From the NCBI RefSeq assembly GCF_032444005.1, contig NC_091288.1:201686001-201750000 (forward strand): 64,000 nt of DNA. The letters are read 5' to 3'. The position numbers were made by a program, and so were the translations under genes. This document shows positions 1 through 39,499 of this stretch, piece after piece. Below the pieces are notes generated by a model. That model worked only from the letters and a program-made list of their open reading frames with translations, was not told the origin of the DNA and ran no database searches. This DNA is from Ranitomeya imitator. Lineage: Eukaryota. Numbering within the stretch: position 1 is the stretch's first letter; every line of letters begins with the position of its first letter.

Positions 1-3000
1 TGCCACCACCTCCTCCCCGCAGAGCTGTATGATCAGTGCCACCACCTCCTCCCCGCAGAGCTGTATGATCAGAGCCACCACCTTCTCCCCCGCAGAGCTG
101 TATGATCAGAGCCACCACCCTCTCCCCCGCAGTGCTGTATGATCAGTGCCACCACCTCCTCCCCGCAGAGGTGTATGATCAGTGCCATCACCTCCTCCCC
201 GCAGAGCTGTATGATCAGTGCCACCACCTCCTCCCCGCAGAGCTGTATGATCAGAGCCACCACCTTCTCCCCGCAGAGCTGTATGATCAGTGCCACCACC
301 TTCTCCCCGCAGAGCTGTATGATCAGAGCCACCACCTCCTCCCCGCAGAGCTGTATGATCAGAGCCACCACCTTCTCCCCCGCAGAGCTGTATGATCAGA
401 GCCACCACCCTCTCCCCCGCAGTGCTGTATGATCAGTGCCACCACCTTCTCCCCGCAGAGCTGTATGATCAGTGCCTCCACCTCCTCCCCGCAGAGCTGT
501 ATGATCAGAGCCACCGCCTCCTCCCCGCAGAGCTGTATGATCAGTGCCACCACCTTCTCCCCTGCAGTGCTGTATGATCAGTGCCACCACCTTCTCCCCG
601 CAGAGCTGTATGATCAGTGCCACCACCTCCTCCCTGCAGAGCTGTATGATCAGTGCCACCACCTCCTCCCCGCAGAGCTGTATGATCAGTGCCACCACCT
701 TCTCCCCGCAGAGCTGTATGATCAGAGCCTCCACCTCCTCCCCGCAGAGCTGTATGATCAGTGCCTCCACCTCCTCCCCGCAGAGCTGTATGATCAGTGC
801 CTCCACCTCCTCCCAGCAGACCTGTATGATCAGTGCCTCCACCTCCTCCCCGCAGAGCTGTATGATCAGAGCCACCACCTCCTCCCTGCAGAGCTGTATG
901 ATCAGTGCCACCACCTCCTCCCCTCAGAGATGTATGATCAGTGCCACCACCTCCTCCCCGCAGAGCTGTATGATCAGTGCCACTACCTTCTCCCCGCAGA
1001 ACTGTATGATCAGTGCCACCGCCTCCTCCCCGCAGAGCTGTATGATCAGTGCCACCACCTCCTCCCCTCAGAGATGTATGATCAGTGCCACCACCTCCTC
1101 CCCTCAGAGATGTATGATCAGTGCCACCACCTCCTCCCCGCAGAACTGTATGATCAGTGCCACCACCTCCTCCCCGCAGAGCTGTATGATCAGTGCCACC
1201 ACCTCCTCCCAGCAGAGCTGTATGATCAGAGCCACCGCCTCCTCCCCGCAGAGCTGTATGATCAGTGCCACCACCTCCTCCCCGCAGAGCTGTATGATCA
1301 GTGCCACCACCTCCTCCCCGCAGAGCTGTATGATCAGAGCCACCACCTCCTCCCCGCAGAGCTGTATGATCAGTGCCACCACCTACTCCCCGCAGAGCTG
1401 TATGATCAGTGCCTCCACCTCCTCCCCGCAGAGCTGTATGATCAGTGCCTCCACCTCCTCCCCGCAGAGCTGTATGATCAGTGCCTCCACCTCCTCCCCG
1501 CAGACCTGTATGATCAGTGCCTCCACCTCCTCCCCGCAGAGCTGTATGATCAGAGCCACCGCCTCCTCCCCGCAGAGCTGTATGATCAGTGCCTCCACCT
1601 CCTCCCCGCAGAGCTGTATGATCAGTGCCTCCACCTCCTCCCCGCAGAGCTGTATGATCAGCGCCTCCACCTCCTCCCCGCAGAGCTGTATGATCAGAGC
1701 CACCACCTCCTCCCCGCAGAGCTGTATGATCAGTGCCTCCACCTCCTCCCCGCAGAGCTGTATGATCAGTGCCACCACCTTCTCCCCGCAGAGCTGTATG
1801 ATCAGAGCCACCACCTCCTCCCCGCAAAGCTGTATGATCAGTGCCTCCACCTCCTCCCCGCAGAGCTGTATGATCAGAGCCACCACCTCCTCCCCGCAGA
1901 GCTGTATGATCAGTGCCTCCACCTCCTCCCCGCAGAGCTGTATGATCAGTGCCTCCACCTCCTCCCCGCAGAGCTGTATGATCAGTGCCACCTCCTCCTC
2001 CCCGCAGAGCTGTATGATCAGTGCCACCACCTCCTCCCCGCAGAGCTGTATGATCAGTGCCACCACCTTCTCTCCGCAGAGCTGTATGATCAGTGCCACC
2101 ACCTCCTCCCCGCAGAGCTGTATGATCAGTGCCTCCATCTCCTCCCCGCAGAGCTGTATGATCAGTGCCACCACCTTCTCCCCGCAGAGCTGTATGATCA
2201 GTGCCACCACCTCCTCCCCGCAGAGCTGTATGATCAGTGCCTCCACCTCCTCCCCGCAGAGCTGTATGATCAGTGCCTCCACCTCCTCCCCGCAGAGCTG
2301 TATGATCAGAGCCACCACCTCCTCCTCGCAGAGCTGTATGATCAGTGCCATCACCTCCTCCCCGCAAAGCTGTATGATCAGAGCCACTACCTCCTCCCCG
2401 CAGAGCTGTATGATCAGTGCCATCACCTCCTCCCCGCAGAGCTGTATGATCAGTGCCACCACCTCCTCCCCGCAGAGCTGTATGATCAGAGCCACCACCT
2501 CCTCCCCGCAGAGCTGTATGATCAGAGCCACCACCTTCTCCCCCGCAGAGCTGTATGATCAGAGCCACCACCCTCTCCCCCGCAGTGCTGTATGATCAGT
2601 GCCACCACCTCCTCCCCGCAGAGCTGTATGATCAGTGCCATCACCTCCTCCCCGCAGAGCTGTATGATCAGTGCCACCACCTCCTCCCCGCAGAGCTGTA
2701 TGATCAGAGCCACCACCTTCTCCCCGCAGAGCTGTATGATCAGTGCCACCACCTTCTCCCCGCAGAGCTGTATGATCAGAGCCACCACCTCCTCCCCGCA
2801 GAGCTGTATGATCAGAGCCACCACCTTCTCCCCCGCAGAGCTGTATGATCAGAGCCACCACCCTCTCCCCCGCAGTGCTGTATGATCAGTGCCACCACCT
2901 CCTCCCCGCAGAGCTGTATGATCAGAGCCACCACCTCCTCCCCGCAGAGCTGTATGATCAGTGCCACCACCTTCTCCCCCGCAGTGCTGTATGATCAGTG

Positions 3001-6000
3001 CCACCACCTCCCCGCAGAGCTGTATGATCAGTGCCACCACCTCCCCGCAGAGCTGTATGATCAGTGCCACCACCTCCTCCCCGCAGAGCTGTATGATCAG
3101 TGCCTCCACCTCCTCCCCGCAGAGCTTTATGATCAGAGCCACCGCCTCCTCCCCGCAGAGCTGTATGATCAGTGCCACCACCTTCTCCCCTGCAGAGCTG
3201 TATGATCAGAGCCACCACCCTCTCCCCCGCAGTGCTGTATGATCAGTGCCACCACCTCCTCCCCGCAGAGCTGTATGATCAGAGCCACCACCTCCTCCCC
3301 GCAGAGCTGTATGATCAGTGCCACCACCTTCTCCCCCGCAGTGCTGTATGATCAGTGCCACCACCTTCTCCCCTGCAGAGCTGTATGATCAGTGCCACCA
3401 CCTCCTCCCCGCAGAGCTGTATGATCAGTGCCTCCACCTCCTCCCCGCAGAGCTGTATGATCAGAGCCACCACCTTCTCCTCGCAGAGCTGTATGATCAG
3501 TGCCATCACCTCCTCCCCGCAGAGCTGTATGATCAGTGCCACCGCCTCCTCCCCGCAGAGCTGTATGATCAGCGCCTCCACCTCCTCCCCGCAGAGCTGT
3601 ATGATCAGAGCCACCACCTCCTCCCCGCAGAGCTGTATGATCAGTGCCTCCACCTCCTCCCCGCAGAGCTGTATGATCAGTGCCACCACCTCCTCCCCGC
3701 AGAGCTGTATGATCAGTGCCACCACCTCCTCCCCGCAGAGCTGTATGATCAGAGCCACCACCTTCTCCCCCGCAGAGCTGTATGATCAGAGCCACCACCC
3801 TCTCCCCCGCAGTGCTGTATGATCAGTGCCACCACCTCCTCCCCGCAGAGGTGTATGATCAGTGCCATCACCTCCTCCCCGCAGAGCTGTATGATCAGTG
3901 CCACCACCTCCTCCCCGCAGAGCTGTATGATCAGAGCCACCACCTTCTCCCCGCAGAGCTGTATGATCAGTGCCACCACCTTCTCCCCGCAGAGCTGTAT
4001 GATCAGAGCCACCACCTCCTCCCCGCAGAGCTGTATGATCAGAGCCACCACCTTCTCCCCCGCAGAGCTGTATGATCAGAGCCACCACCCTCTCCCCCGC
4101 AGTGCTGTATGATCAGTGCCACCACCTTCTCCCCGCAGAGCTGTATGATCAGTGCCTCCACCTCCTCCCCGCAGAGCTGTATGATCAGAGCCACCGCCTC
4201 CTCCCCGCAGAGCTGTATGATCAGTGCCACCACCTTCTCCCCTGCAGTGCTGTATGATCAGTGCCACCACCTTCTCCCCGCAGAGCTGTATGATCAGTGC
4301 CACCACCTCCTCCCTGCAGAGCTGTATGATCAGTGCCACCACCTCCTCCCCGCAGAGCTGTATGATCAGTGCCACCACCTTCTCCCCGCAGAGCTGTATG
4401 ATCAGAGCCTCCACCTCCTCCCCGCAGAGCTGTATGATCAGTGCCTCCACCTCCTCCCCGCAGAGCTGTATGACCAGTGCCTCCACCTCCTCCCAGCAGA
4501 CCTGTATGATCAGTGCCTCCACCTCCTCCCCGCAGAGCTGTATGATCAGAGCCACCACCTCCTCCCTGCAGAGCTGTATGATCAGTGCCACCACCTCCTC
4601 CCCTCAGAGATGTATGATCAGTGCCACCACCTCCTCCCCGCAGAGCTGTATGATCAGTGCCACTACCTTCTCCCCGCAGAACTGTATGATCAGTGCCACC
4701 GCCTCCTCCCCGCAGAGCTGTATGATCAGTGCCACCACCTCCTCCCCTCAGAGATGTATGATCAGTGCCACCACCTCCTCCCCTCAGAGATGTATGATCA
4801 GTGCCACCACCTCCTCCCCGCAGAACTGTATGATCAGTGCCACCACCTCCTCCCCGCAGAGCTGTATGATCAGTGCCACCACCTCCTCCCAGCAGAGCTG
4901 TATGATCAGAGCCACCGCCTCCTCCCCGCAGAGCTGTATGATCAGTGCCACCACCTCCTCCCCGCAGAGCTGTATGATCAGTGCCACCACCTCCTCCCCG
5001 CAGAGCTGTATGATCAGAGCCACCACCTCCTCCCCGCAGAGCTGTATGATCAGTGCCACCACCTACTCCCCGCAGAGCTGTATGATCAGTGCCTCCACCT
5101 CCTCCCCGCAGAGCTGTATGATCAGTGCCTCCACCTCCTCCCCGCAGAGCTGTATGATCAGTGCCTCCACCTCCTCCCCGCAGACCTGTATGATCAGTGC
5201 CTCCACCTCCTCCCCGCAGAGCTGTATGATCAGAGCCACCGCCTCCTCCCCGCAGAGCTGTATGATCAGTGCCTCCACCTCCTCCCCGCAGAGCTGTATG
5301 ATCAGTGCCTCCACCTCCTCCCCGCAGAGCTGTATGATCAGCGCCTCCACCTCCTCCCCGCAGAGCTGTATGATCAGAGCCACCACCTCCTCCCCGCAGA
5401 GCTGTATGATCAGTGCCTCCACCTCCTCCCCGCAGAGCTGTATGATCAGTGCCACCACCTTCTCCCCGCAGAGCTGTATGATCAGAGCCACCACCTCCTC
5501 CCCGCAAAGCTGTATGATCAGTGCCTCCACCTCCTCCCCGCAGAGCTGTATGATCAGAGCCACCACCTCCTCCCCGCAGAGCTGTATGATCAGTGCCTCC
5601 ACCTCCTCCCCGCAGAGCTGTATGATCAGTGCCTCCACCTCCTCCCCGCAGAGCTGTATGATCAGTGCCAGCTCCTCCTCCCCGCAGAGCTGTATGATCA
5701 GTGCCACCACCTCCTCCCCGCAGAGCTGTATGATCAGTGCCACCACCTTCTCTCCGCAGAGCTGTATGATCAGTGCCACCACCTCCTCCCCGCAGAGCTG
5801 TATGATCAGTGCCTCCATCTCCTCCCCGCAGAGCTGTATGATCAGTGCCACCACCTTCTCCCCGCAGAGCTGTATGATCAGTGCCACCACCTCCTCCCCG
5901 CAGAGCTGTATGATCAGTGCCTCCACCTCCTCCCCGCAGAGCTGTATGATCAGTGCCTCCACCTCCTCCCCGCAGAGCTGTATGATCAGAGCCACCACCT

Positions 6001-9000
6001 CCTCCTCGCAGAGCTGTATGATCAGTGCCATCACCTCCTCCCCGCAAAGCTGTATGATCAGAGCCACTACCTCCTCCCCGCAGAGCTGTATGATCAGTGC
6101 CATCACCTCCTCCCCGCAGAGCTGTATGATCAGTGCCTCCACCTCCTCCCCGCAGAGCTGTATGATCAGAGCCACCACCTTCTCCCCGCAGAGCTGTATG
6201 ATCAGTGCCACCACCTTCTCCCCGCAGAGCTGTATGATCAGAGCCACCACCTCCTCCCCGCAGAGCTGTATGATCAGAGCCACCACCTTCTCCCCGCAGA
6301 GCTGTATGATCAGAGCCACCACCTCCTCCCCGCAGAGCTGTATGATCAGAGCCACCACCTTCTCCCCCGCAGAGCTGTATGATCAGAGCCACCACCCTCT
6401 CCCCCGCAGTGCTGTATGATCAGTGCCACCACCTCCTCCCCGCAGAGCTGTATGATCAGTGCCATCACCTCCTCCCCGCAGAGCTGTATGATCAGTGCCA
6501 CCACCTCCTCCCCGCAGAGCTGTATGATCAGAGCCACCACCTTCTCCCCGCAGAGCTGTATGATCAGTGCCACCACCTTCTCCCCGCAGAGCTGTATGAT
6601 CAGAGCCACCACCTCCTCCCCGCAGAGCTGTATGATCAGAGCCACCACCTTCTCCCCCGCAGAGCTGTATGATCAGAGCCACCACCCTCTCCCCCGCAGT
6701 GCTGTATGATCAGTGCCACCACCTCCTCCCCGCAGAGCTGTATGATCAGAGCCACCACCTCCTCCCCGCAGAGCTGTATGATCAGTGCCACCACCTTCTC
6801 CTCCGCAGTGCTGTATGATCAGTGCCACCACCTCCCCGCAGAGCTGTATGATCAGTGCCACCACCTCCCCGCAGAGCTGTATGATCAGTGCCACCACCTC
6901 CTCCCCGCAGAGCTGTATGATCAGTGCCTCCACCTCCTCCCCGCAGAGCTTTATGATCAGAGCCACCGCCTCCTCCCCGCAGAGCTGTATGATCAGTGCC
7001 ACCACCTTCTCCCCTGCAGAGCTGTATGATCAGAGCCACCACCCTCTCCCCCGCAGTGCTGTATGATCAGTGCCACCACCTCCTCCCCGCAGAGCTGTAT
7101 GATCAGTGCCACCACCTCCTCCCTGCAGAGCTGTATGATCAGTGCCACCACCTCCTCCCCGCAGAGCTGTATGATCAGTGCCACCACCTCCTCCCTGCAG
7201 AGCTGTATGATCAGTGCCACCACCTCCTCCCTGCAGAGCTGTATGATCAGAGCCACCACCTCCTCCCTGCAGAGCTGTATGATCAGTGCCACCACCTCCT
7301 CCCTGCAGAGCTGTATGATCAGTGCCACCACCTCCTCCCTGCAGAGCTGTATGATCAGTGCCACCACCTCCTCCCCGCAGAGCTGTATGATCAGTGCCTC
7401 CACCTCCTCCCCGCAGAGCTTTATGATCAGAGCCACCGCCTCCTCCCCGCAGAGCTGTATGATCAGTGCCACCACCTTCTCCCCTGCAGAGCTGTATGAT
7501 CAGAGCCACCACCCTCTCCCCCGCAGTGCTGTATGATCAGTGCCACCACCTCCTCCCCGCAGAGCTGTATGATCAGAGCCACCACCTCCTCCCCGCAGAG
7601 CTGTATGATCAGTGCCACCACCTTCTCCCCCGCAGTGCTGTATGATCAGTGCCACCACCTTCTCCCCTGCAGAGCTGTATGATCAGTGCCACCACCTCCT
7701 CCCCGCAGAGCTGTATGATCAGTGCCTCCACCTCCTCCCCGCAGAGCTGTATGATCAGAGCCACCACCTCCTCCTCGCAGAGCTGTATGATCAGTGCCAT
7801 CACCTCCTCCCCGCAGAGCTGTATGATCAGTGCCACCGCCTCCTCCCCGCAGAGCTGTATGATCAGCGCCTCCACCTCCTCCCCGCAGAGCTGTATGATC
7901 AGAGCCACCACCTCCTCCCCGCAGAGCTGTATGATCAGTGCCTCCACCTCCTCCCCGCAGAGCTGTATGATCAGTGCCACCACCTCCTCCCCGCAGAGCT
8001 GTATGATCAGTGCCACCACCTCCTCCCCGCAGAGCTGTATGATCAGAGCCACCACCTTCTCCCCCGCAGAGCTGTATGATCAGAGCCACCACCCTCTCCC
8101 CCGCAGTGCTGTATGATCAGTGCCACCACCTCCTCCCCGCAGAGGTGTATGATCAGTGCCATCACCTCCTCCCCGCAGAGCTGTATGATCAGTGCCACCA
8201 CCTCCTCCCCGCAGAGCTGTATGATCAGAGCCACCACCTTCTCCCCGCAGAGCTGTATGATCAGTGCCACCACCTTCTCCCCGCAGAGCTGTATGATCAG
8301 AGCCACCACCTCCTCCCCGCAGAGCTGTATGATCAGAGCCACCACCTTCTCCCCCGCAGAGCTGTATGATCAGAGCCACCACCCTCTCCCCCGCAGTGCT
8401 GTATGATCAGTGCCACCACCTTCTCCCCGCAGAGCTGTATGATCAGTGCCTCCACCTCCTCCCCGCAGAGCTGTATGATCAGAGCCACCGCCTCCTCCCC
8501 GCAGAGCTGTATGATCAGTGCCACCACCTTCTCCCCTGCAGTGCTGTATGATCAGTGCCACCACCTTCTCCCCGCAGAGCTGTATGATCAGTGCCACCAC
8601 CTCCTCCCTGCAGAGCTGTATGATCAGTGCCACCACCTCCTCCCCGCAGAGCTGTATGATCAGTGCCACCACCTTCTCCCCGCAGAGCTGTATGATCAGA
8701 GCCTCCACCTCCTCCCCGCAGAGCTGTATGATCAGTGCCTCCACCTCCTCCCCGCAGAGCTGTATGACCAGTGCCTCCACCTCCTCCCAGCAGACCTGTA
8801 TGATCAGTGCCTCCACCTCCTCCCCGCAGAGCTGTATGATCAGAGCCACCACCTCCTCCCTGCAGAGCTGTATGATCAGTGCCACCACCTCCTCCCCTCA
8901 GAGATGTATGATCAGTGCCACCACCTCCTCCCCGCAGAGCTGTATGATCAGTGCCACTACCTTCTCCCCGCAGAACTGTATGATCAGTGCCACCGCCTCC

Positions 9001-11720
9001 TCCCCGCAGAGCTGTATGATCAGTGCCACCACCTCCTCCCCTCAGAGATGTATGATCAGTGCCACCACCTCCTCCCCTCAGAGATGTATGATCAGTGCCA
9101 CCACCTCCTCCCCGCAGAACTGTATGATCAGTGCCACCACCTCCTCCCCGCAGAGCTGTATGATCAGTGCCACCACCTCCTCCCAGCAGAGCTGTATGAT
9201 CAGAGCCACCGCCTCCTCCCCGCAGAGCTGTATGATCAGTGCCACCACCTCCTCCCCGCAGAGCTGTATGATCAGTGCCACCACCTCCTCCCCGCAGAGC
9301 TGTATGATCAGAGCCACCACCTCCTCCCCGCAGAGCTGTATGATCAGTGCCACCACCTACTCCCCGCAGAGCTGTATGATCAGTGCCTCCACCTCCTCCC
9401 CGCAGAGCTGTATGATCAGTGCCTCCACCTCCTCCCCGCAGAGCTGTATGATCAGTGCCTCCACCTCCTCCCCGCAGACCTGTATGATCAGTGCCTCCAC
9501 CTCCTCCCCGCAGAGCTGTATGATCAGAGCCACCGCCTCCTCCCCGCAGAGCTGTATGATCAGTGCCTCCACCTCCTCCCCGCAGAGCTGTATGATCAGT
9601 GCCTCCACCTCCTCCCCGCAGAGCTGTATGATCAGCGCCTCCACCTCCTCCCCGCAGAGCTGTATGATCAGAGCCACCACCTCCTCCCCGCAGAGCTGTA
9701 TGATCAGTGCCTCCACCTCCTCCCCGCAGAGCTGTATGATCAGTGCCACCACCTTCTCCCCGCAGAGCTGTATGATCAGAGCCACCACCTCCTCCCCGCA
9801 AAGCTGTATGATCAGTGCCTCCACCTCCTCCCCGCAGAGCTGTATGATCAGAGCCACCACCTCCTCCCCGCAGAGCTGTATGATCAGTGCCTCCACCTCC
9901 TCCCCGCAGAGCTGTATGATCAGTGCCTCCACCTCCTCCCCGCAGAGCTGTATGATCAGTGCCAGCTCCTCCTCCCCGCAGAGCTGTATGATCAGTGCCA
10001 CCACCTCCTCCCCGCAGAGCTGTATGATCAGTGCCACCACCTTCTCTCCGCAGAGCTGTATGATCAGTGCCACCACCTCCTCCCCGCAGAGCTGTATGAT
10101 CAGTGCCTCCATCTCCTCCCCGCAGAGCTGTATGATCAGTGCCACCACCTTCTCCCCGCAGAGCTGTATGATCAGTGCCACCACCTCCTCCCCGCAGAGC
10201 TGTATGATCAGTGCCTCCACCTCCTCCCCGCAGAGCTGTATGATCAGTGCCTCCACCTCCTCCCCGCAGAGCTGTATGATCAGAGCCACCACCTCCTCCT
10301 CGCAGAGCTGTATGATCAGTGCCATCACCTCCTCCCCGCAAAGCTGTATGATCAGAGCCACTACCTCCTCCCCGCAGAGCTGTATGATCAGTGCCATCAC
10401 CTCCTCCCCGCAGAGCTGTATGATCAGTGCCACCACCTCCTCCCCGCAGAGCTGTATGATCAGAGCCACCACCTTCTCCCCGCAGAGCTGTATGATCAGT
10501 GCCACCACCTTCTCCCCGCAGAGCTGTATGATCAGAGCCACCACCTCCTCCCCGCAGAGCTGTATGATCAGAGCCACCACCTTCTCCCCGCAGAGCTGTA
10601 TGATCAGAGCCACCACCTCCTCCCCGCAGAGCTGTATGATCAGAGCCACCACCTTCTCCCCCGCAGAGCTGTATGATCAGAGCCACCACCCTCTCCCCCG
10701 CAGTGCTGTATGATCAGTGCCACCACCTCCTCCCCGCAGAGCTGTATGATCAGTGCCATCACCTCCTCCCCGCAGAGCTGTATGATCAGTGCCACCACCT
10801 CCTCCCCGCAGAGCTGTATGATCAGAGCCACCACCTTCTCCCCGCAGAGCTGTATGATCAGTGCCACCACCTTCTCCCCGCAGAGCTGTATGATCAGAGC
10901 CACCACCTCCTCCCCGCAGAGCTGTATGATCAGAGCCACCACCTTCTCCCCCGCAGAGCTGTATGATCAGAGCCACCACCCTCTCCCCCGCAGTGCTGTA
11001 TGATCAGTGCCACCACCTCCTCCCCGCAGAGCTGTATGATCAGAGTCACCACCTCCTCCCCGCAGAGCTGTATGATCAGTGCCACCACCTTCTCCTCCGC
11101 AGTGCTGTATGATCAGTGCCACCACCTCCCCGCAGAGCTGTATGATCAGTGCCACCACCTCCCCGCAGAGCTGTATGATCAGTGCCACCACCTCCTCCCC
11201 GCAGAGCTGTATGATCAGTGCCTCCACCTCCTCCCCGCAGAGCTTTATGATCAGAGCCACCGCCTCCTCCCCGCAGAGCTGTATGATCAGTGCCACCACC
11301 TTCTCCCCTGCAGAGCTGTATGATCAGAGCCACCACCCTCTCCCCCGCAGTGCTGTATGATCAGTGCCACCACCTCCTCCCCGCAGAGCTGTATGATCAG
11401 TGCCACCACCTCCTCCCTGCAGAGCTGTATGATCAGTGCCACCACCTCCTCCCCGCAGAGCTGTATGATCAGTGCCACCACCTCCTCCCTGCAGAGCTGT
11501 ATGATCAGTGCCACCACCTCCTCCCTGCAGAGCTGTATGATCAGAGCCACCACCTCCTCCCTGCAGAGCTGTATGATCAGTGCCACCACCTCCTCCCTGC
11601 AGAGCTGTATGATCAGTGCCACCACCTCCTCCCTGCAGAGCTGTATGATCAGTGCCACCACCTCCTCCCTGCAGAGCTGTATGATCAGTGCCACCACCTC
11701 CTCCCCACGGAGCTGTATGA
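1..11720 (+). repeat. 36-bp tandem satellite (GCAGAGCTGTATGATCAG[T/A]GCCACCACCTCCTCCCC, with 33- and 37-bp variants), about 325 copies, open at the left edge
   Basis: Monomer read directly; all ORFs here are 12-aa repeats (PAELYDQCHHLL etc.); array degenerates at about 11701-11720. Confidence 0.98.
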
Positions 11721-11778
11721 TTAGTTCTCGGACTTCTAATGTTTTTAATATAACTGATGCTGGGCGCAGTCTCAGGAT

Positions 11779-11803
11779 GGGGGGGGGGGGGGGGGGGGGG
11801 GGG
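11779..11803 (+). repeat. poly-G run (25 nt)
   Basis: Direct count. Confidence 0.95.
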
Positions 11804-11912: not shown

Positions 11913-12560
<648 letters not shown>

Positions 12561-12589
12561 ATCTGCCCCGGCTGCGACCACAACACAAA

Positions 12590-13784: not shown

Positions 13785-14147
<363 letters not shown>

Positions 14148-14193: not shown

Positions 14194-14539
14194 ACCCACA
14201 TCTTCTAAGTGAGAGGCTGCACCTGACTGCTCGGATCTAACTTCTGCTCTCCCCTGGTGATGTCGCTGTAATGCTGGTAGAACACTCATCGATGCCGACT
14301 TTACTTTCCGTATACTACGGGGTCGGAAACCTTGAATTGTGGCGGATGGTAATTCTGACACTACTCCGCCGTCCCACTAACGTCCTCTGATGCTGTGTGG
14401 GCGGATGGTTCTGTTGCTCTTATCAGAGCCGCCACATTGATAAGAACAAGCTATGATCCCCGCTGTGTGATGCGGCGTCTGCTGTAATATGCGCCTGGAA
14501 GATCATCGGATGGAATATCCACAGCTATATACATTTATA

Positions 14540-15094: not shown

Positions 15095-15653
<559 letters not shown>

Positions 15654-15683
15654 NNNNNTCCGTGCTCCGCTCCTCACCCCAAA

Positions 15684-15699
15684 GGCTCTTCTAAGAGCC
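15684..15699 (+). terminator. Histone 3' stem-loop of H2B
   Basis: GGCTCT TCTA AGAGCC ACCCA. Confidence 0.95.
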
Positions 15700-15966
15700 A
15701 CCCACACCCTCCCTATAAGAGCCACCCACACCCTCACTATAAGAGCCACCTGCACCCTCACTATAAGAGCCACCCGCACCCTCACTATAAGAGCCACCCG
15801 CACCCTCACTATAAGAGCCACCCGCACCCTCACTATAAGAGCCACCCGCACCCTCACTATAAGAGCCACCCGCACCCTCACTACAAGAGCCACCCGCACC
15901 CTCACTACAAGAGCCACCCACACCCTCACTATAAGAGCCACCCACACCCTCACTACAAGAGCCACC
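15692..15966 (+). repeat. 24-bp minisatellite (TAAGAGCCACCC[A/G]CACCCTCACTA), 11 full units plus a partial one, starting inside the H2B stem-loop
   Basis: AAGAGCC recurs every 24 nt from 15693 to 15957. Confidence 0.97.
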
Positions 15967-16164
15967 CTCCCCGAGGTGTCTGCTCGCTCCGCCCGGGGCT
16001 CTGCGTCTGGTGACGAGGGAGATGGTGAGAAAACCTCGGGAATAATCTGAGCATTTCTCAGTGAGTTGCTGTGTATTCAGGGACTTATCTTTAACCCCTT
16101 GCTGCACAGATATCTGCATTCTGGGGGAACATTTATGATTCCCTGTTCTCCACATGCTGTGATG

Positions 16165-16380
16165 TTCCCGTGTGTCTGACCTGGAGACGATCAGATCGTC
16201 CCTTTCCCGTCACAATCCGTATTGTGCAGACGATATACTGGTCAGGGACGTATCCTACAAGAGACGGTTCAGGGAAGACCAATTCTGCCCTTCCCAGCAG
16301 ATCCCACCATGTCTCCCCATTATCGATCAGTCCTACGGCTGCAGGCAGGAGGTCTGTGATGGGAAATGTAGGATCATGTG
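16165..16380 (-). mobile_element. Degenerate LINE remnant (probably L1/Tx1 ORF2 C-terminal part), copy 1
   Basis: Aligns by eye with 23630-23890. Confidence 0.4.
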
Positions 16381-18300
16381 TAGAAGATTGCGGAGTGTCC
16401 CTGCTCAGAACATTACCCTGTGGTGTCAGGATCTCACAGGTCAGGCAGTTACATTATCGGCCGTCACATCCTCCTCACAGGATTCCTGCTCAGTTACTGA
16501 TCGTCCTTCTGTTCTATCACTTTTCCTCCCCCGCTTCATCCAGCTCTCGGGCAATATATCCACTGTAGAAGCTCCGAGAATGAAGAGGGGAACAACGAAT
16601 CGTAGGAGAAATATCCCAATATAATCGCAGGATAAGATCCTCTAGCACCAGATGTAATGATGTATAAGGAATGTCATAGATCTCGGAGGAGACTGTTCAG
16701 GGTGACAAACGGAGAAGCTAAAAACAAGAGTCAGACCCAAACATCAATCATCCTCAGCAAAAATGAAAATAGTGGGTCCATCAATGATCGGGTGCCACCA
16801 TTTGCCCGGAAAGCAAAGGGTTAATATAACATGAGATAAAATCACTGCAGTGCAGAGAGCTCCGATCACAAATCTGACTGTAAGATGCCAAGTACTGGTG
16901 ACTCCCATCACAGCACAAATGTCACTAATGCCGGGAATATAAGGACTGAGCTCCTGCAGCTGCAGAAGAGCCAAGAAAAAAGAGCAAGTGGGATCAGTCC
17001 TGGGGTTAATGGAATGTTCTCTGTGAAAACCGAAGATCCTGAGGACGGGGCCGGTGTCAGATCCCCTGTGCGGCAGCCTGTAATATCAGCAGTGGTCACA
17101 GCCTGGGCAGTGTCCGTTATATCCTCCTGACATATACTGGGGCGGTGTCACCTCCCATTACTATTTTTGATCTCCCGTCATTCATCTTGGAACTGGTTCC
17201 GCTGACGTCGGTGGATGCGGTTTCTTCATATTGATCTATAAAATATAACACGGATTTACAGGGAAATGGGCTGTACAGTAATATTCTCCTGATCAGATCC
17301 GTGTGGGGTGAATAGGGCAGCGAATATTCACAGGGAATGTGGCTGTATGAGGCAGCTGGATAGATGGACGCCCTGTGTACCGGGTACGGAGACTCCTGTG
17401 TGATGACCACGTCCTGGACTAATGTTTCGGATGGATGGCGCCTATGAAGGTTATTATAACCTCCCCAGAGTAATAATGGCGACCGATCCCCGCCCGTGTT
17501 TGGGGGCAGACAGCTGGGAGGACAGGACCCGGTATTATCAGCGATCGCCGCTCCAGCAGAGGGGCCGGTAATAATCCGACGGACGAAGAACAGAGATTGA
17601 GCGGGAAATTCAAAACCAGCAACGGATCTGTAATCAGCCAATGAGCGAGAGACATCCGCAGGCGCCGACCAATCCCAGATACAGGAATATCCGCCTCCAT
17701 TTAACTCCTTAGTGTCCGTGTGTGCTGACCCCCCCACTACACACTCGCTTTATTATTACAGAAGCGGCGACTTCCCCCACCCTAGACCCGGCAGCGTCAC
17801 ATCAGGCTCCGGGCAGAACATAGGAGACTTGTCTCAGTCAGGCTGTGATAGGATCAGCGCGGACACCACAGGGAATCTGCACAGGGTAATAAGCGGGTGA
17901 GTGAGGAGCCGCCTCCTGTGCAGATGGAGCGGAGGAGAAGCACTGACAGGGATTAACCCCTCACCCGCCAGACTGTCTTTGCAATTTATGGCTGATAGTA
18001 GACACAAATTCAACAGGTGCAAACTACAAATCAACAGAATATTTCTGCATTTCCTTCTGCTCCAAGAAAAATATCTGTTTTCACCCCTTATCTAGTCTGT
18101 TCAAAACAAACGTTTTCTATTGGTTGAGAAACTAATTTGAGCAAGGAGCAGTAATAAGCTCCGCCCTCGGCCGCTCATTGGCGGGTCCTCATGACTCTTC
18201 CCGATTGGCAGCTTCAGATCCATCCAATGACAGGAGAGGAGGCGGAGCAACAGGACTATATAAGGCCACACAGCACAGTCTCTTCGCCACAAGATTTTAG

Positions 18301-18714
<414 letters not shown>

Positions 18715-18743
18715 GCGCTGCCGCCAATCTCTACAAAACCAAA

Positions 18744-18759
18744 GGCTCTTCTAAGAGCC
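18744..18759 (+). terminator. Histone 3' stem-loop of H2A
   Basis: GGCTCTTCTAAGAGCC ACCCA; HDE-like AAGAGCC at 18777. Confidence 0.95.
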
Positions 18760-19605
18760 ACCCACACCGTCACCACAAGAGCCGGCGCCGCCTATCTCGG
18801 GGGTCCTCGCATGAGGCTGATGGTACATACACCATTGCCGCCATTGTTGGTGCACATATCCACAGAATAATAGGAGATGAATCCCACATGAAGTCTCAGA
18901 CCCCTCAGGTGGGAGTGTCGTCTGCCAAGCTCGCAGGAAATGTCCCCTCCTTAGTGTCTGATACTCCGCGGTGAGGTCTACATGTAGTTAGCAGGTCCCG
19001 GAGTATCGGGACCGGGCGGGTGATTCTCCTCCACATCAGTGACGGCGCCTTCTCTCGGAGGACGATCCCGTGTGCGGCGGCTCTGGAGGACAGGACTCCG
19101 CGCTGTTCCGGGTGTGACCGGATTGTGATCTCAGCTATCGGCAGTGACCGGTAATAATCCTCCAGAGATTATGAGCGGAAAACTCAATGGATCATGTGAT
19201 AAGACAATGAGCGGGCAACCTTGGTGACGCTCAGCCTTTATTGATGTACATAGACGTCTCTCCTTTCCCGTTTAACTCCTTACTTGCCATTTTTGCAGCT
19301 GATACCAGAGTATCCACAGATGCGGCACCTTCACCTCAGGCCCCAGAAACGATGTGTCCCCTATACAGCACACAATGTATACACTTTACCCTGTCCTTAT
19401 AAAACGTCAGTCATGTAATTGATGTCGCACTTTTGGACTTGGTGAGAATAAAGGATGCGCGGAGCGGTAACTGGAATATCGCTGATCACCTACAATATCG
19501 GACACAGCAGCCGGCTATTACCTTTCCTGAACGCGCTCCGTATATGGAGAATACGCGCAGAAGAGAGACCGTTCAGGACTCGGCTCATTTGTGGGAGGAT
19601 TTGGT

Positions 19606-19621
19606 GGCTCTGAAAAGAGCC
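19606..19621 (-). terminator. Histone 3' stem-loop of H3 (minus copy)
   Basis: GGCTCTGAAAAGAGCC on + is the reverse complement of the canonical stem-loop. Confidence 0.97.
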
Positions 19622-19650
19622 TTTGTGTTGTGGTCGCAGCCGGGGCAGAT

Positions 19651-20895: not shown

Positions 20896-21580
20896 TTGAT
20901 AAATTCCCCTAATCAGAGACTCCTGTATGGAAGGAAGACAAGAGACCATTAATCGCTCATCATCCTGAGACCACGTGTTACATAAGGACACTGCACAAGG
21001 AGAAACCTTAACCCTTAGATCCCAGTCAGCCTCTCACCCAGTCAAATCATCTCAATTTGTACTGAGGGGCAATACCCCCAAAAAAACGCGTCTACAAATT
21101 GAGTTTCTGGTTTCGCGGTTATCCCAAATCATATTTCAAGGTTCGTTAGTCGATAATGACGTGTAGGATTGTTACTTCCAGTAGGTGGCACTAGTGTACA
21201 AGTCATCTTCCTCTGAGTTTGTACATGAAGACAAAGAAGAGCCGGAGAGGACAGCTGACATTAACTGCTAAATCCGGCCAGTGTTAACCCATCAGCGACA
21301 CCATGTCTCACAACTATGTCACTTCTCACTCCATAAAGGCTGCTCCGGCACCGACCACACACAACGTTTCACCAGCTCCAATACACAACGCGCTCAACCG
21401 GGGAAAATCAGCCTTCACTGACGAGATGGTGAAAGTTCAGAGAAAATGTGCGTGACATTGAGTCTGTACCAATCAGTGTCCGAAAAGCGAAGATCTTAGA
21501 TGTCTAACCTAGATGACAAAAAAAAATAAAGAACCAGAGCGCAGGAATAGGAAGGTGCAGCCTCTCACTGAGATGTGGGT

Positions 21581-21596
21581 GGCTCTGAAAAGAGCC
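21581..21596 (-). terminator. Histone 3' stem-loop of H4 (minus copy)
   Basis: GGCTCTGAAAAGAGCC on +. Confidence 0.97.
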
Positions 21597-21626
21597 TTTG
21601 GGTTGTGAGGACAGAAGAGAACACAA

Positions 21627-30321: not shown

Positions 30322-30527
30322 CACATCAGCCATAGAGAGGGGCGGCCATAACATCAGCCATACAGAGGGGCAGCCACCACATCAGCCATAGAGAGGGGCG
30401 GTCACCACTTCAGCCAAAGAGAGGGGCGGTCACCACATCAGCCACACAGAGGGGCGGCCATCACATCAGCCATACAGAGGGGCAGCCACCACATCAGCCA
30501 CAGAGAGGGGCGGCCATCACATCAGCC

Positions 30528-30530
<3 letters not shown>
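30322..30530 (+). repeat. 28-bp minisatellite (CACATCAGCCATAGAGAGGGGCGGCCAT), about 7 units, resuming at 31584-31622
   Basis: CATCAGCC at 30324, 30352, 30380... Confidence 0.9.
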
Positions 30531-39035: not shown

Positions 39036-39499
39036 GTTGTCATAGGGATCTGGGGGTCAAGGAGTGTTGTCATAGGGATCTGGGGGTCAATGAGTGTTGT
39101 CATAGGGATCTGGGGGTCAAGGAGTGTTGTCATAGGGATCTGGGGGTCAAGGAGTGTTGTCATAGGGATCTGGGGGTCAAGGAGTGTTGTCATAGGGATC
39201 TGGGGGTCAAGGAGTGTTGTCATAGGGATCTGGGGGTCAAGGAGTGTTGTCATAGGGATCTGGGGGTCAAGGAGTGTTGTCATAGGGATCTGGGGGTCAA
39301 GGAGTGTTGTCATAGGGATCTGGGGGTCAAGGAGTGTTGTCATAGGGATCTGGGGGTCAAGGAGTGTTGTCATAGGGATCTGGGGGTCAAGGAGTGTTGT
39401 CATGGGGATCTGGGGGTCAAGGAGTGTTGTCATAGGGATCTGGGGGTCAAGGAGTGTTGTCATAGGGATCTGGGGGTCAATGAGTGTTGTCATAGGGAT
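39036..39499 (+). repeat. 30-bp minisatellite (GTTGTCATAGGGATCTGGGGGTCAAGGAGT), about 15.5 units
   Basis: Near-perfect tandem units. Confidence 0.97.

What the first reader, a model, noticed from the sequence alone, without database searches (positions are those of the whole stretch)
15684..15966. A second, independent repeat expansion from a histone stem-loop: 24-bp array after H2B
Seen: the array starts inside the H2B stem (AAGAGCC at 15693) and repeats 12 times every 24 nt. The unexpanded H2A gene shows the likely ancestral state: stem AAGAGCC at 18753 and HDE-like AAGAGCC at 18777, exactly 24 nt apart, with similar intervening sequence. Inference: the AAGAGC microhomology between stem arm and HDE drives slippage or unequal exchange, so histone 3' ends are a hotspot for repeat birth. 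This is a small visible model for the 36-bp array. The last unit ends GAGCCACCCTCCCCG, close to the 36-mer. Multiple HDEs could alter H2B processing efficiency.
Basis: partly seen in the sequence, partly recalled or inferred. Interest (0 to 1): 0.72.

Follow-up and report, generated by a model that had tools for sequence, protein, structure and literature searches.

The report
Repeat grown from H2B cutting signal
Behind a frog histone H2B gene, the 24 letters from the mRNA hairpin's second arm to the downstream cutting signal are copied head-to-tail 11.5 times; the repeat is real and its origin is clear, but it is most likely a tolerated by-product and nothing shows it is used.

Summary
A 24-bp array of 11.5 units (96% matches) lies at 15692-15967. 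Its first unit is the 3' arm of the H2B stem-loop itself. The neighbouring H2A gene has the same unusual hairpin loop (TCTA). It also has the same 7-letter word, AAGAGCC, in the stem arm and 24 nt later at the expected U7-binding site (HDE), in single copy.

The array therefore grew in place, most likely by slippage or unequal exchange between these two direct repeats. Its period equals the arm-to-HDE distance found at five of the six histone 3' ends here. The first unit keeps a complete processing signal, so H2B mRNA can probably still be made. The later units lack the 5' arm.

Contigs under a second species label hold both array junctions. Words of the array are 100 to 4,000 times deeper than the flank, so this is a large repeat family and not an assembly error. 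No RNA contig lay on the array, so use and harm are both unshown.

The scan has found this before on other DNA of this genome: H2B arrays of 29 to 82 copies and one of 38 kb. This is the shortest copy noted.

The parts
15273..15373 (+). Visible start of the H2B coding region (first 33 codons); the rest, 15374-15658, is masked with N
   Evidence: ATG at 15273 and a canonical H2B N-terminal tail. A TATA box and CCAAT boxes lie upstream at 15098-15210 (read).
15684..15699 (+). H2B histone stem-loop: 6-bp stem and loop TCTA
   Evidence: One search gives an exact pattern match. One search gives Rfam RF00032 at 32.7 bits, E 7.5e-07, over 15679-15723 (gathering score 34).
15700..15704 (+). ACCCA, the expected cleavage-site context (inferred by analogy with other vertebrate histone genes)
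   Evidence: the same ACCCA follows the H4 and H2A stem-loops in this window. The cleavage itself is not shown.
15717..15723 (+). First HDE-like core AAGAGCC, 12 nt after ACCCA, at the position of the H2A HDE-like core
   Evidence: duplex with the mammalian U7 5' end is -12.0 to -12.6 kcal/mol, against -11.6 at H2A and -11.5 at H4.
15693..15956 (+). Eleven full 24-bp units: stem arm or HDE word, then ACCC(A/G)CACCCTC(A/C)CTA(T/C)
   Evidence: Edge units 0, 1, 9 and 10 carry the A variant seen at H2A. Units 3-8 share a derived G at position 12, and unit 2 has TG at positions 11-12.
15957..15967 (+). Partial twelfth unit (11 nt, AAGAGCCACCC), the right-hand copy of the ancestral direct repeat; unique flank follows
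   Evidence: A contig of run X3 (organism B) spans 15913-15996 with 2 differences (record 12).
18744..18783 (+). H2A stem-loop (18744-18759) and single HDE-like AAGAGCC (18777-18783): the unexpanded layout used for comparison
   Evidence: RF00032 at 33.2 bits. By my reading, 41 of the 45 letters from 5 nt before the stem to the HDE core match H2B.

Best explanation
This is a minisatellite that grew in place from the 3' processing signal of a replication-type histone H2B gene. In this frog the H2A and H2B hairpins have the loop TCTA. The loop's last base plus the 3' stem arm therefore reads AAGAGCC, the same word as the core of the downstream U7-binding site (HDE) 24 nt later. These two direct repeats (7 nt at H2A, 11 nt implied at H2B) allowed replication slippage or unequal exchange to duplicate the 24-nt stretch between them. 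Further unequal exchange then raised the copy number and made the interior units alike (inferred). The first unit still forms a full signal: hairpin, ACCCA, 12-nt spacer and HDE-like word. SLBP and U7 snRNP should therefore cut at the normal place. The remaining units lie in the downstream product, which is normally degraded (inferred from the known pathway, PMC7026596). The extra units have no 5' arm and cannot form hairpins of their own. The array is most likely a tolerated by-product of a repeat-prone locus.
For: The array and its register are shown. The first unit is the stem arm, and only one RF00032 match lies on the array. H2A has the same loop, a spacer alike at 15 of 17 letters, and AAGAGCC twice 24 nt apart in single copy. 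At five of the six histone 3' ends in the window, the longest direct repeat between loop/arm and downstream lies at an offset of exactly 24 nt: H3a and H3b 5 nt, H4a 4 nt, H2A 7 nt, and H2B, where the match is the array's own period. H4b is the exception, at 17 nt. The period thus equals the normal arm-to-HDE distance, and the expanded gene has the longest repeat. The partial last unit of 11 nt marks the right-hand repeat. Edge units resemble H2A most, and interior units share a derived G, as expected for interior expansion. Contigs under another species label span the left junction (15679-15757) and the right junction (15913-15996). Array words are far deeper than the flank: up to 963,197 against 215 in X1, and 988.7 against 2.3 in X3. 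This shows a real, shared, high-copy family. [quoted passage not shown]
Against: No RNA contig lay on the hairpin or the array, so normal processing and neutrality are assumed, not shown. Slippage is inferred from the anatomy alone. The ancestral state is read from a different gene (H2A), not from an H2B orthologue. In an equilibrium folding model the canonical H2B hairpin has a probability of only about 0.47 with the array, against about 1.0 at H2A, because the 5' arm can pair with later arm copies. That leaves room for a cost. U7 pairing was scored with the mammalian U7 5' end, not the frog's, and 5% of random 31-mers in the window pair at least as well.
Confidence: 0.7

Rival explanations
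1. The array is used. Each unit offers an ACCCA context plus an HDE-like word, so the units act as back-up U7 snRNP cleavage or termination sites, or as landing sites that raise local U7 concentration at the histone locus. They would stop polymerase before it reaches the H2A gene 2.3 kb downstream on the same strand.
For: All 11 repeated HDE-like sites pair with the U7 5' end as well as the H2A and H4 sites do, at -9.9 to -12.2 kcal/mol. No AATAAA or ATTAAA lies between the array and H2A, so there is no obvious back-up poly(A) site. The array and both its junctions are kept under a second species label. Substrates with strong U7 pairing can be cut without SLBP (PMC7026596).
Against: The pairing is modest (9 bp with a mismatch) and no better than 5% of random 31-mers. 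H3-to-H4 and H4-to-H2B are also same-strand neighbours and have no array. Copy number ranges from 11.5 here to 29-82 and 38 kb elsewhere by earlier notes, which fits drift better than a tuned device. No RNA evidence was found.
Confidence: 0.12
2. The array is mildly harmful. Later copies of the 3' arm compete with the true arm for the 5' arm, and extra HDE-like sites draw U7 away from the correct one. This H2B copy would then be processed less well and be on its way to decay within a large gene family.
For: The equilibrium probability of the canonical hairpin falls to about 0.47 with the array, against about 1.0 at H2A. Misfolding of the nascent hairpin is known to impair SLBP binding and processing in human cells (PMC5859970).
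Against: The local tetraloop hairpin forms first during transcription, and SLBP should lock it. The promoter, the start of the coding region and the full first signal are intact. By earlier notes the array is present at many H2B genes, so it cannot be strongly harmful.
Confidence: 0.1
3. The direction was the reverse. A pre-existing 24-bp satellite was joined to the H2B 3' end, and H2A acquired 1.3 units by gene conversion.
For: The 24-mer is a very abundant family. H2A and H2B share an unusually similar 3' end, which shows exchange between them.
Against: The unit is exactly the arm-to-HDE module of a normal histone signal, and its length matches the H3 and H4a spacing too. The first unit is in register with the hairpin and is unique at position 20. 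A single copy is the universal layout of such signals.
Confidence: 0.05
4. The array is an assembly artefact beside the N run.
For: None was found. The N run sits 34 nt upstream of the array.
Against: The N run has the length and place of the masked H2B coding region. The units carry ordered variants. Independent contigs of another species label cross both junctions.
Confidence: 0.02

Closest known systems
Canonical metazoan replication-dependent histone mRNA 3' signal (stem-loop, ACCCA, HDE; Rfam RF00032; U7 snRNP and SLBP pathway)
   Same: The first unit together with the 5' arm is such a signal. It has a 6-bp stem, a 4-nt loop with U at loop positions 1 and 3, ACCCA, and a purine core 12 nt further on.
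   Different: The arm-to-HDE stretch is repeated 11.5 times. Units 2 to 12 have no 5' arm. The loop is TCTA, not the usual TTTC, and this is what creates the 7-nt repeat with the HDE core.
The 36-bp array in the same window (1-11725), noted earlier in the scan as derived from the H1 3' signal
   Same: It lies on the sense strand of the histone cluster. Each unit has an arm-like word followed by ACC and an HDE-like word.
   Different: The unit and its geometry differ. The arm-like and HDE-like words are 22 nt apart inside a 36-nt unit, so the breakpoints were not arm and HDE. Alignment of the 24-mer to the 36-mer is no better than shuffles (221 of 2000 as good). It has 325 copies here, against 11.5 for the 24-mer.
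Newt (Notophthalmus) histone clusters separated by satellite DNA that is transcribed by read-through on lampbrush loops (own knowledge of Stephenson, Diaz and Gall 1981; read-through of newt satellite 2 is described in PMC2114352)
   Same: An amphibian histone cluster is directly flanked by tandem repeats that lie downstream of histone genes and could be entered by read-through.
   Different: The newt satellite has a unit of about 220 bp and is not reported to derive from the processing signal. Here the unit is the signal itself. No transcription data exist here.
Satellites born from pieces of multicopy genes, such as the 5S rDNA-derived PcP190 satellite of frogs (own knowledge, not checked here)
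   Same: A segment of a tandemly repeated gene family became a repeat family of its own.
   Different: The source here is a 24-nt RNA-processing signal in the 3' flank, not part of a transcribed RNA gene, and the array is still attached to its parent gene.

Membership tests
Histone mRNA 3' processing signal (RF00032 plus HDE) | A 6-bp stem and 4-nt loop, with A-rich 5' flank and ACCCA 3' flank, right after a histone coding region | tested here: met
   32.7 bits, E 7.5e-07, which is 1.3 bits under Rfam's gathering score. The H2B coding start lies at 15273. Most of the coding region is masked.
Histone mRNA 3' processing signal (RF00032 plus HDE) | A purine-rich HDE that pairs with the U7 snRNA 5' end, about 12-15 nt after the cut site | tested here: inconclusive
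   The position is right and the duplex energy equals that of H2A and H4. However, the U7 used is mammalian (PMC7026596), and 5% of random 31-mers score as well.
Histone mRNA 3' processing signal (RF00032 plus HDE) | Each later array unit is itself a complete signal with its own hairpin | tested here: not met
   Only one RF00032 match lies on 15659-16000. The units hold only the 3' arm.
Histone mRNA 3' processing signal (RF00032 plus HDE) | mRNA 3' ends map just after the hairpin | not testable with these tools
   Only contigs were on offer, and none from the RNA-guessed run lay on the hairpin or array.
Minisatellite formed by slippage or unequal exchange | Head-to-tail copies of a 10-100 bp unit with high identity | tested here: met
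   period 24, 11.5 copies, 96% matches.
Minisatellite formed by slippage or unequal exchange | Short direct repeats bounding the ancestral single unit | tested here: met
   A 7-nt repeat 24 nt apart at H2A, and the 11-nt partial last unit at H2B.
Minisatellite formed by slippage or unequal exchange | Interior units alike and edge units closer to the ancestral form | tested here: met
   Units 3-8 share a derived G. Units 0, 1, 9 and 10 carry the H2A-like A, and unit 10 matches H2A at 22 of 24 positions.
Minisatellite formed by slippage or unequal exchange | Copy number varies between loci or individuals | not tested
   Earlier notes of the scan give 29-82 copies at other H2B genes. Short contigs cannot size an array.

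The most novel reading that the evidence does not exclude
The tandem ACCCA-plus-HDE modules behind H2B (and the larger arrays behind H1) are transcribed and bind U7 snRNP. On this reading they serve as fail-safe cleavage and termination sites, or as a scaffold that concentrates U7 at the histone locus body (the 'sphere' loci of amphibian oocytes). A gene's own processing signal would then have been amplified into a working device.
Probability: 0.1. Interest if true: 0.8.

Novelty: new variant of a known kind. Interest (0 to 1): 0.4.

Why it matters
The finding shows, with both the 'before' state (H2A) and the 'after' state (H2B) in one window, how a functional RNA-processing signal can seed a tandem repeat. 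The hairpin's 3' arm and the U7-binding site are both complementary to a GCUCUU-type strand, so they resemble each other and form a built-in direct repeat. The array is also a natural experiment for the U7 'molecular ruler': one hairpin followed by twelve candidate U7 sites at 24-nt steps. I found no description of satellites derived from histone 3' signals in the paper library. Without RNA data it remains an evolutionary curiosity, not a mechanism.

Tried and rejected
- **RNA evidence.** Only Logan contigs were on offer. The RNA-guessed run X14 and the untyped run X4 lay only on 16144-16471, 16251-16405 and 16565-16664. These are parts of a dispersed repeat, as shown by loose ends at 16144 and 16564 in several runs. 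This says nothing about the array.
- **U7 pairing as a test.** Pairing is as good as at the H2A and H4 sites, but it does not stand out from background.
- **Common origin of the 24-mer and the 36-mer.** The alignments are no better than shuffles.
- **A coding reading.** The array is open in two + frames (one reads KSHPHPHY) and in minus frames. It lies beyond the H2B coding region, and the long ORFs exist only because the mask hides the stop codon. Rejected.
- **Four-stranded DNA (G-quadruplex) on the G-rich template strand.** There is no match with loops of up to 7 nt. Matches appear only if 15-nt loops are allowed. Weak, and not pursued.
- **Cross-species copies in metagenome contigs.** The 25-nt hairpin-plus-spacer pattern found nothing. 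A 21-nt hairpin pattern found three contigs of unknown eukaryotes with the same TCTA loop and no array. They are too distant to date the event. I read only the 200 letters around each match.
- **A hairpin-like word at 14415-14430, behind H4.** It gave no Rfam match at E up to 10.
- **Literature.** Searches for this kind of satellite found nothing.
- **The N run.** It was not filled or looked up.

Full report
**What is there**

The window holds a vertebrate-type histone cluster:
- H3 (+) at 12152-12562
- H4 (+) at 13838-14147
- H2B (+) starting at 15273
- H2A (+) at 18323-18715
- an inverted H3 (20063-19652) and H4 (21939-21630)

Six histone stem-loops were found by pattern. All six match Rfam RF00032 at 32.7-37.5 bits, and three reach the gathering score of 34. 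Earlier notes of the scan call the genome a poison frog (Ranitomeya). I could not test this, because run organisms are coded.

Tandem Repeats Finder gives 15692-15967, period 24, 11.5 copies, 96% matches and no indels. AAGAGCCACC occurs 12 times at exact 24-nt steps from 15693, where 0.15 matches are expected by chance.

The first copy is the last loop base plus the 3' arm of the H2B hairpin at 15684-15699. There are 11 full units (15693-15956) and an 11-nt partial unit (15957-15967). After that the sequence becomes unique.

The N run 15374-15658 is 285 letters, or 95 codons. It is where the rest of a normal-length H2B coding region would lie.

**Where the array came from**

H2A and H2B share an unusual hairpin loop, TCTA, where H3 and H4 have TTTC. 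As a result, the loop's last base plus the 3' arm reads AAGAGCC. At H2A the same word recurs at 18777, exactly 24 nt later and 12 nt after ACCCA, where a U7-binding element (HDE) is expected. By my reading, 41 of 45 letters from just before the hairpin to that word are the same at H2A and H2B.

The H2A 24-mer matches the H2B units at 19-22 of 24 positions. The edge units are the closest to H2A. Units 3-8 share a derived G.

I also looked for the longest direct repeat between loop/arm and the downstream sequence at each of the six histone 3' ends:
- H3a and H3b: 5 nt at offset 24
- H4a: 4 nt at offset 24
- H2A: 7 nt at offset 24
- H2B: offset 24, where the match is the array's own period
- H4b: 4 nt at offset 17

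The short H3 and H4 matches would not be significant on their own. The shared offset shows that 24 nt is the normal arm-to-HDE distance in this frog. The underlying reason is structural: the 3' arm and the HDE core are both complementary to a GCUCUU-type strand (the 5' arm and the U7 5' end respectively, PMC7026596), so they resemble each other.

The array is therefore the arm-to-HDE stretch, duplicated between its two built-in direct repeats. The gene that expanded has the longest repeat, 11 nt, as marked by the partial last unit. The slippage or unequal-exchange step itself is inferred.

**Reality and spread**

I laid the stretch 15659-16700 on contigs of four runs.

In run X3, labelled as a different organism (B), one contig spans 15679-15757, which covers the hairpin and 2.7 units, with 3 differences. 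Another spans 15913-15996, the right junction, with 2 differences.

Summed word depth on the array reaches 963,197 in X1 against about 215 on the flank. In X3 it reaches 988.7 against 2.3. Summed depth is not a copy number. Even so, the contrast shows a very abundant family in both labels. This fits earlier notes of arrays with 29-82 copies and one of 38 kb at other H2B genes of this genome.

An assembly artefact is excluded for practical purposes. My data only show that at least one other species label already has the array with the same junctions.

**What it probably does**

Together with the 5' arm, the first unit is a complete signal. The later units lack a 5' arm, and only one RF00032 match lies on the array.

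By the known pathway (PMC7026596):
- SLBP on the hairpin helps U7 snRNP bind the nearby HDE.
[quoted passage not shown] On that basis I expect normal H2B mRNA, with the array discarded. This is inference.

Scored against the mammalian U7 5' end, the repeated sites pair at -9.9 to -12.6 kcal/mol. That is like H2A (-11.6) and H4 (-11.5), but 5% of random 31-mers do as well. 'Twelve U7 sites' is therefore a possibility, not a finding.

A cost is also possible. In an equilibrium model the canonical hairpin has a probability of about 0.47 with the array, against about 1.0 at H2A, because the 5' arm can pair with later arms. Misfolding of the nascent hairpin is known to impair processing (PMC5859970). 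Folding during transcription and SLBP binding should favour the local hairpin.

No poly(A) signal lies between the array and H2A. No RNA contig lay on the hairpin or the array, so use and harm both remain untested.

**Relation to the 36-bp array**

The 36-mer (1-11725) also has an arm-like word followed by ACC, and an HDE-like word. These lie 22 nt apart inside a 36-nt unit, so its breakpoints were different. Alignments to the 24-mer or to the last H2B unit are no better than shuffles.

**Novelty**

I found no paper describing satellites derived from histone 3' signals. The kind of event is ordinary: a minisatellite arising from a direct repeat. The source is unusual, and the window shows both the unexpanded and the expanded state side by side.

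The scan has reported the same H2B array at several other loci of this genome. This is the shortest copy so far.

Noticed in passing
window 1-11725: A 36-bp array of about 325 copies (93% matches) runs off the left edge and ends 430 nt before the H3 gene. Of 214 units put in register, 137 begin AGTGCCA and 77 begin AGAGCCA. Spacings of 37 and 33 nt also occur.
   Followed up: partly
window 11779-11803: A run of 25 G lies just after the end of the 36-bp array.
   Followed up: no
window 16144-16700: Contigs from four runs (three organism labels) match from 16144 and from 16564 onward but carry different sequence before those points. A dispersed repeat therefore starts about 175 nt behind the array. 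The only contigs of the RNA-guessed run lie here.
   Followed up: partly
window 15704 (run X3, organism B): One contig matches the hairpin through ACCCA and then continues with 24 unrelated letters. This may be a histone gene copy with the same hairpin but no array or HDE in that species label.
   Followed up: no
window 14415-14430: A hairpin-like word with one mismatch to the histone stem-loop pattern lies 237 nt behind the H4 stem-loop. It gave no Rfam match at E up to 10, so it is either chance or a decayed relic.
   Followed up: partly
window 30322-30530 and 39036-39499: Two further minisatellites lie away from the histone genes: a 28-bp unit with 7.5 copies (87% matches) and a 30-bp unit with 15.5 copies (98% matches).
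   Followed up: no
window 19581-19626 and 21558-21601 (minus strand): The inverted H3 and H4 copies keep nearly the same hairpin, spacer and HDE-like words as the + strand copies. The H4b spacer is 3 nt shorter than that of H4a.
   Followed up: partly
L001:3243-3263, L002:128-148, L003:1848-1868: Three metagenome contigs of unknown eukaryotes carry a histone hairpin with the same TCTA loop. Each has a single downstream region and no array.
   Followed up: partly
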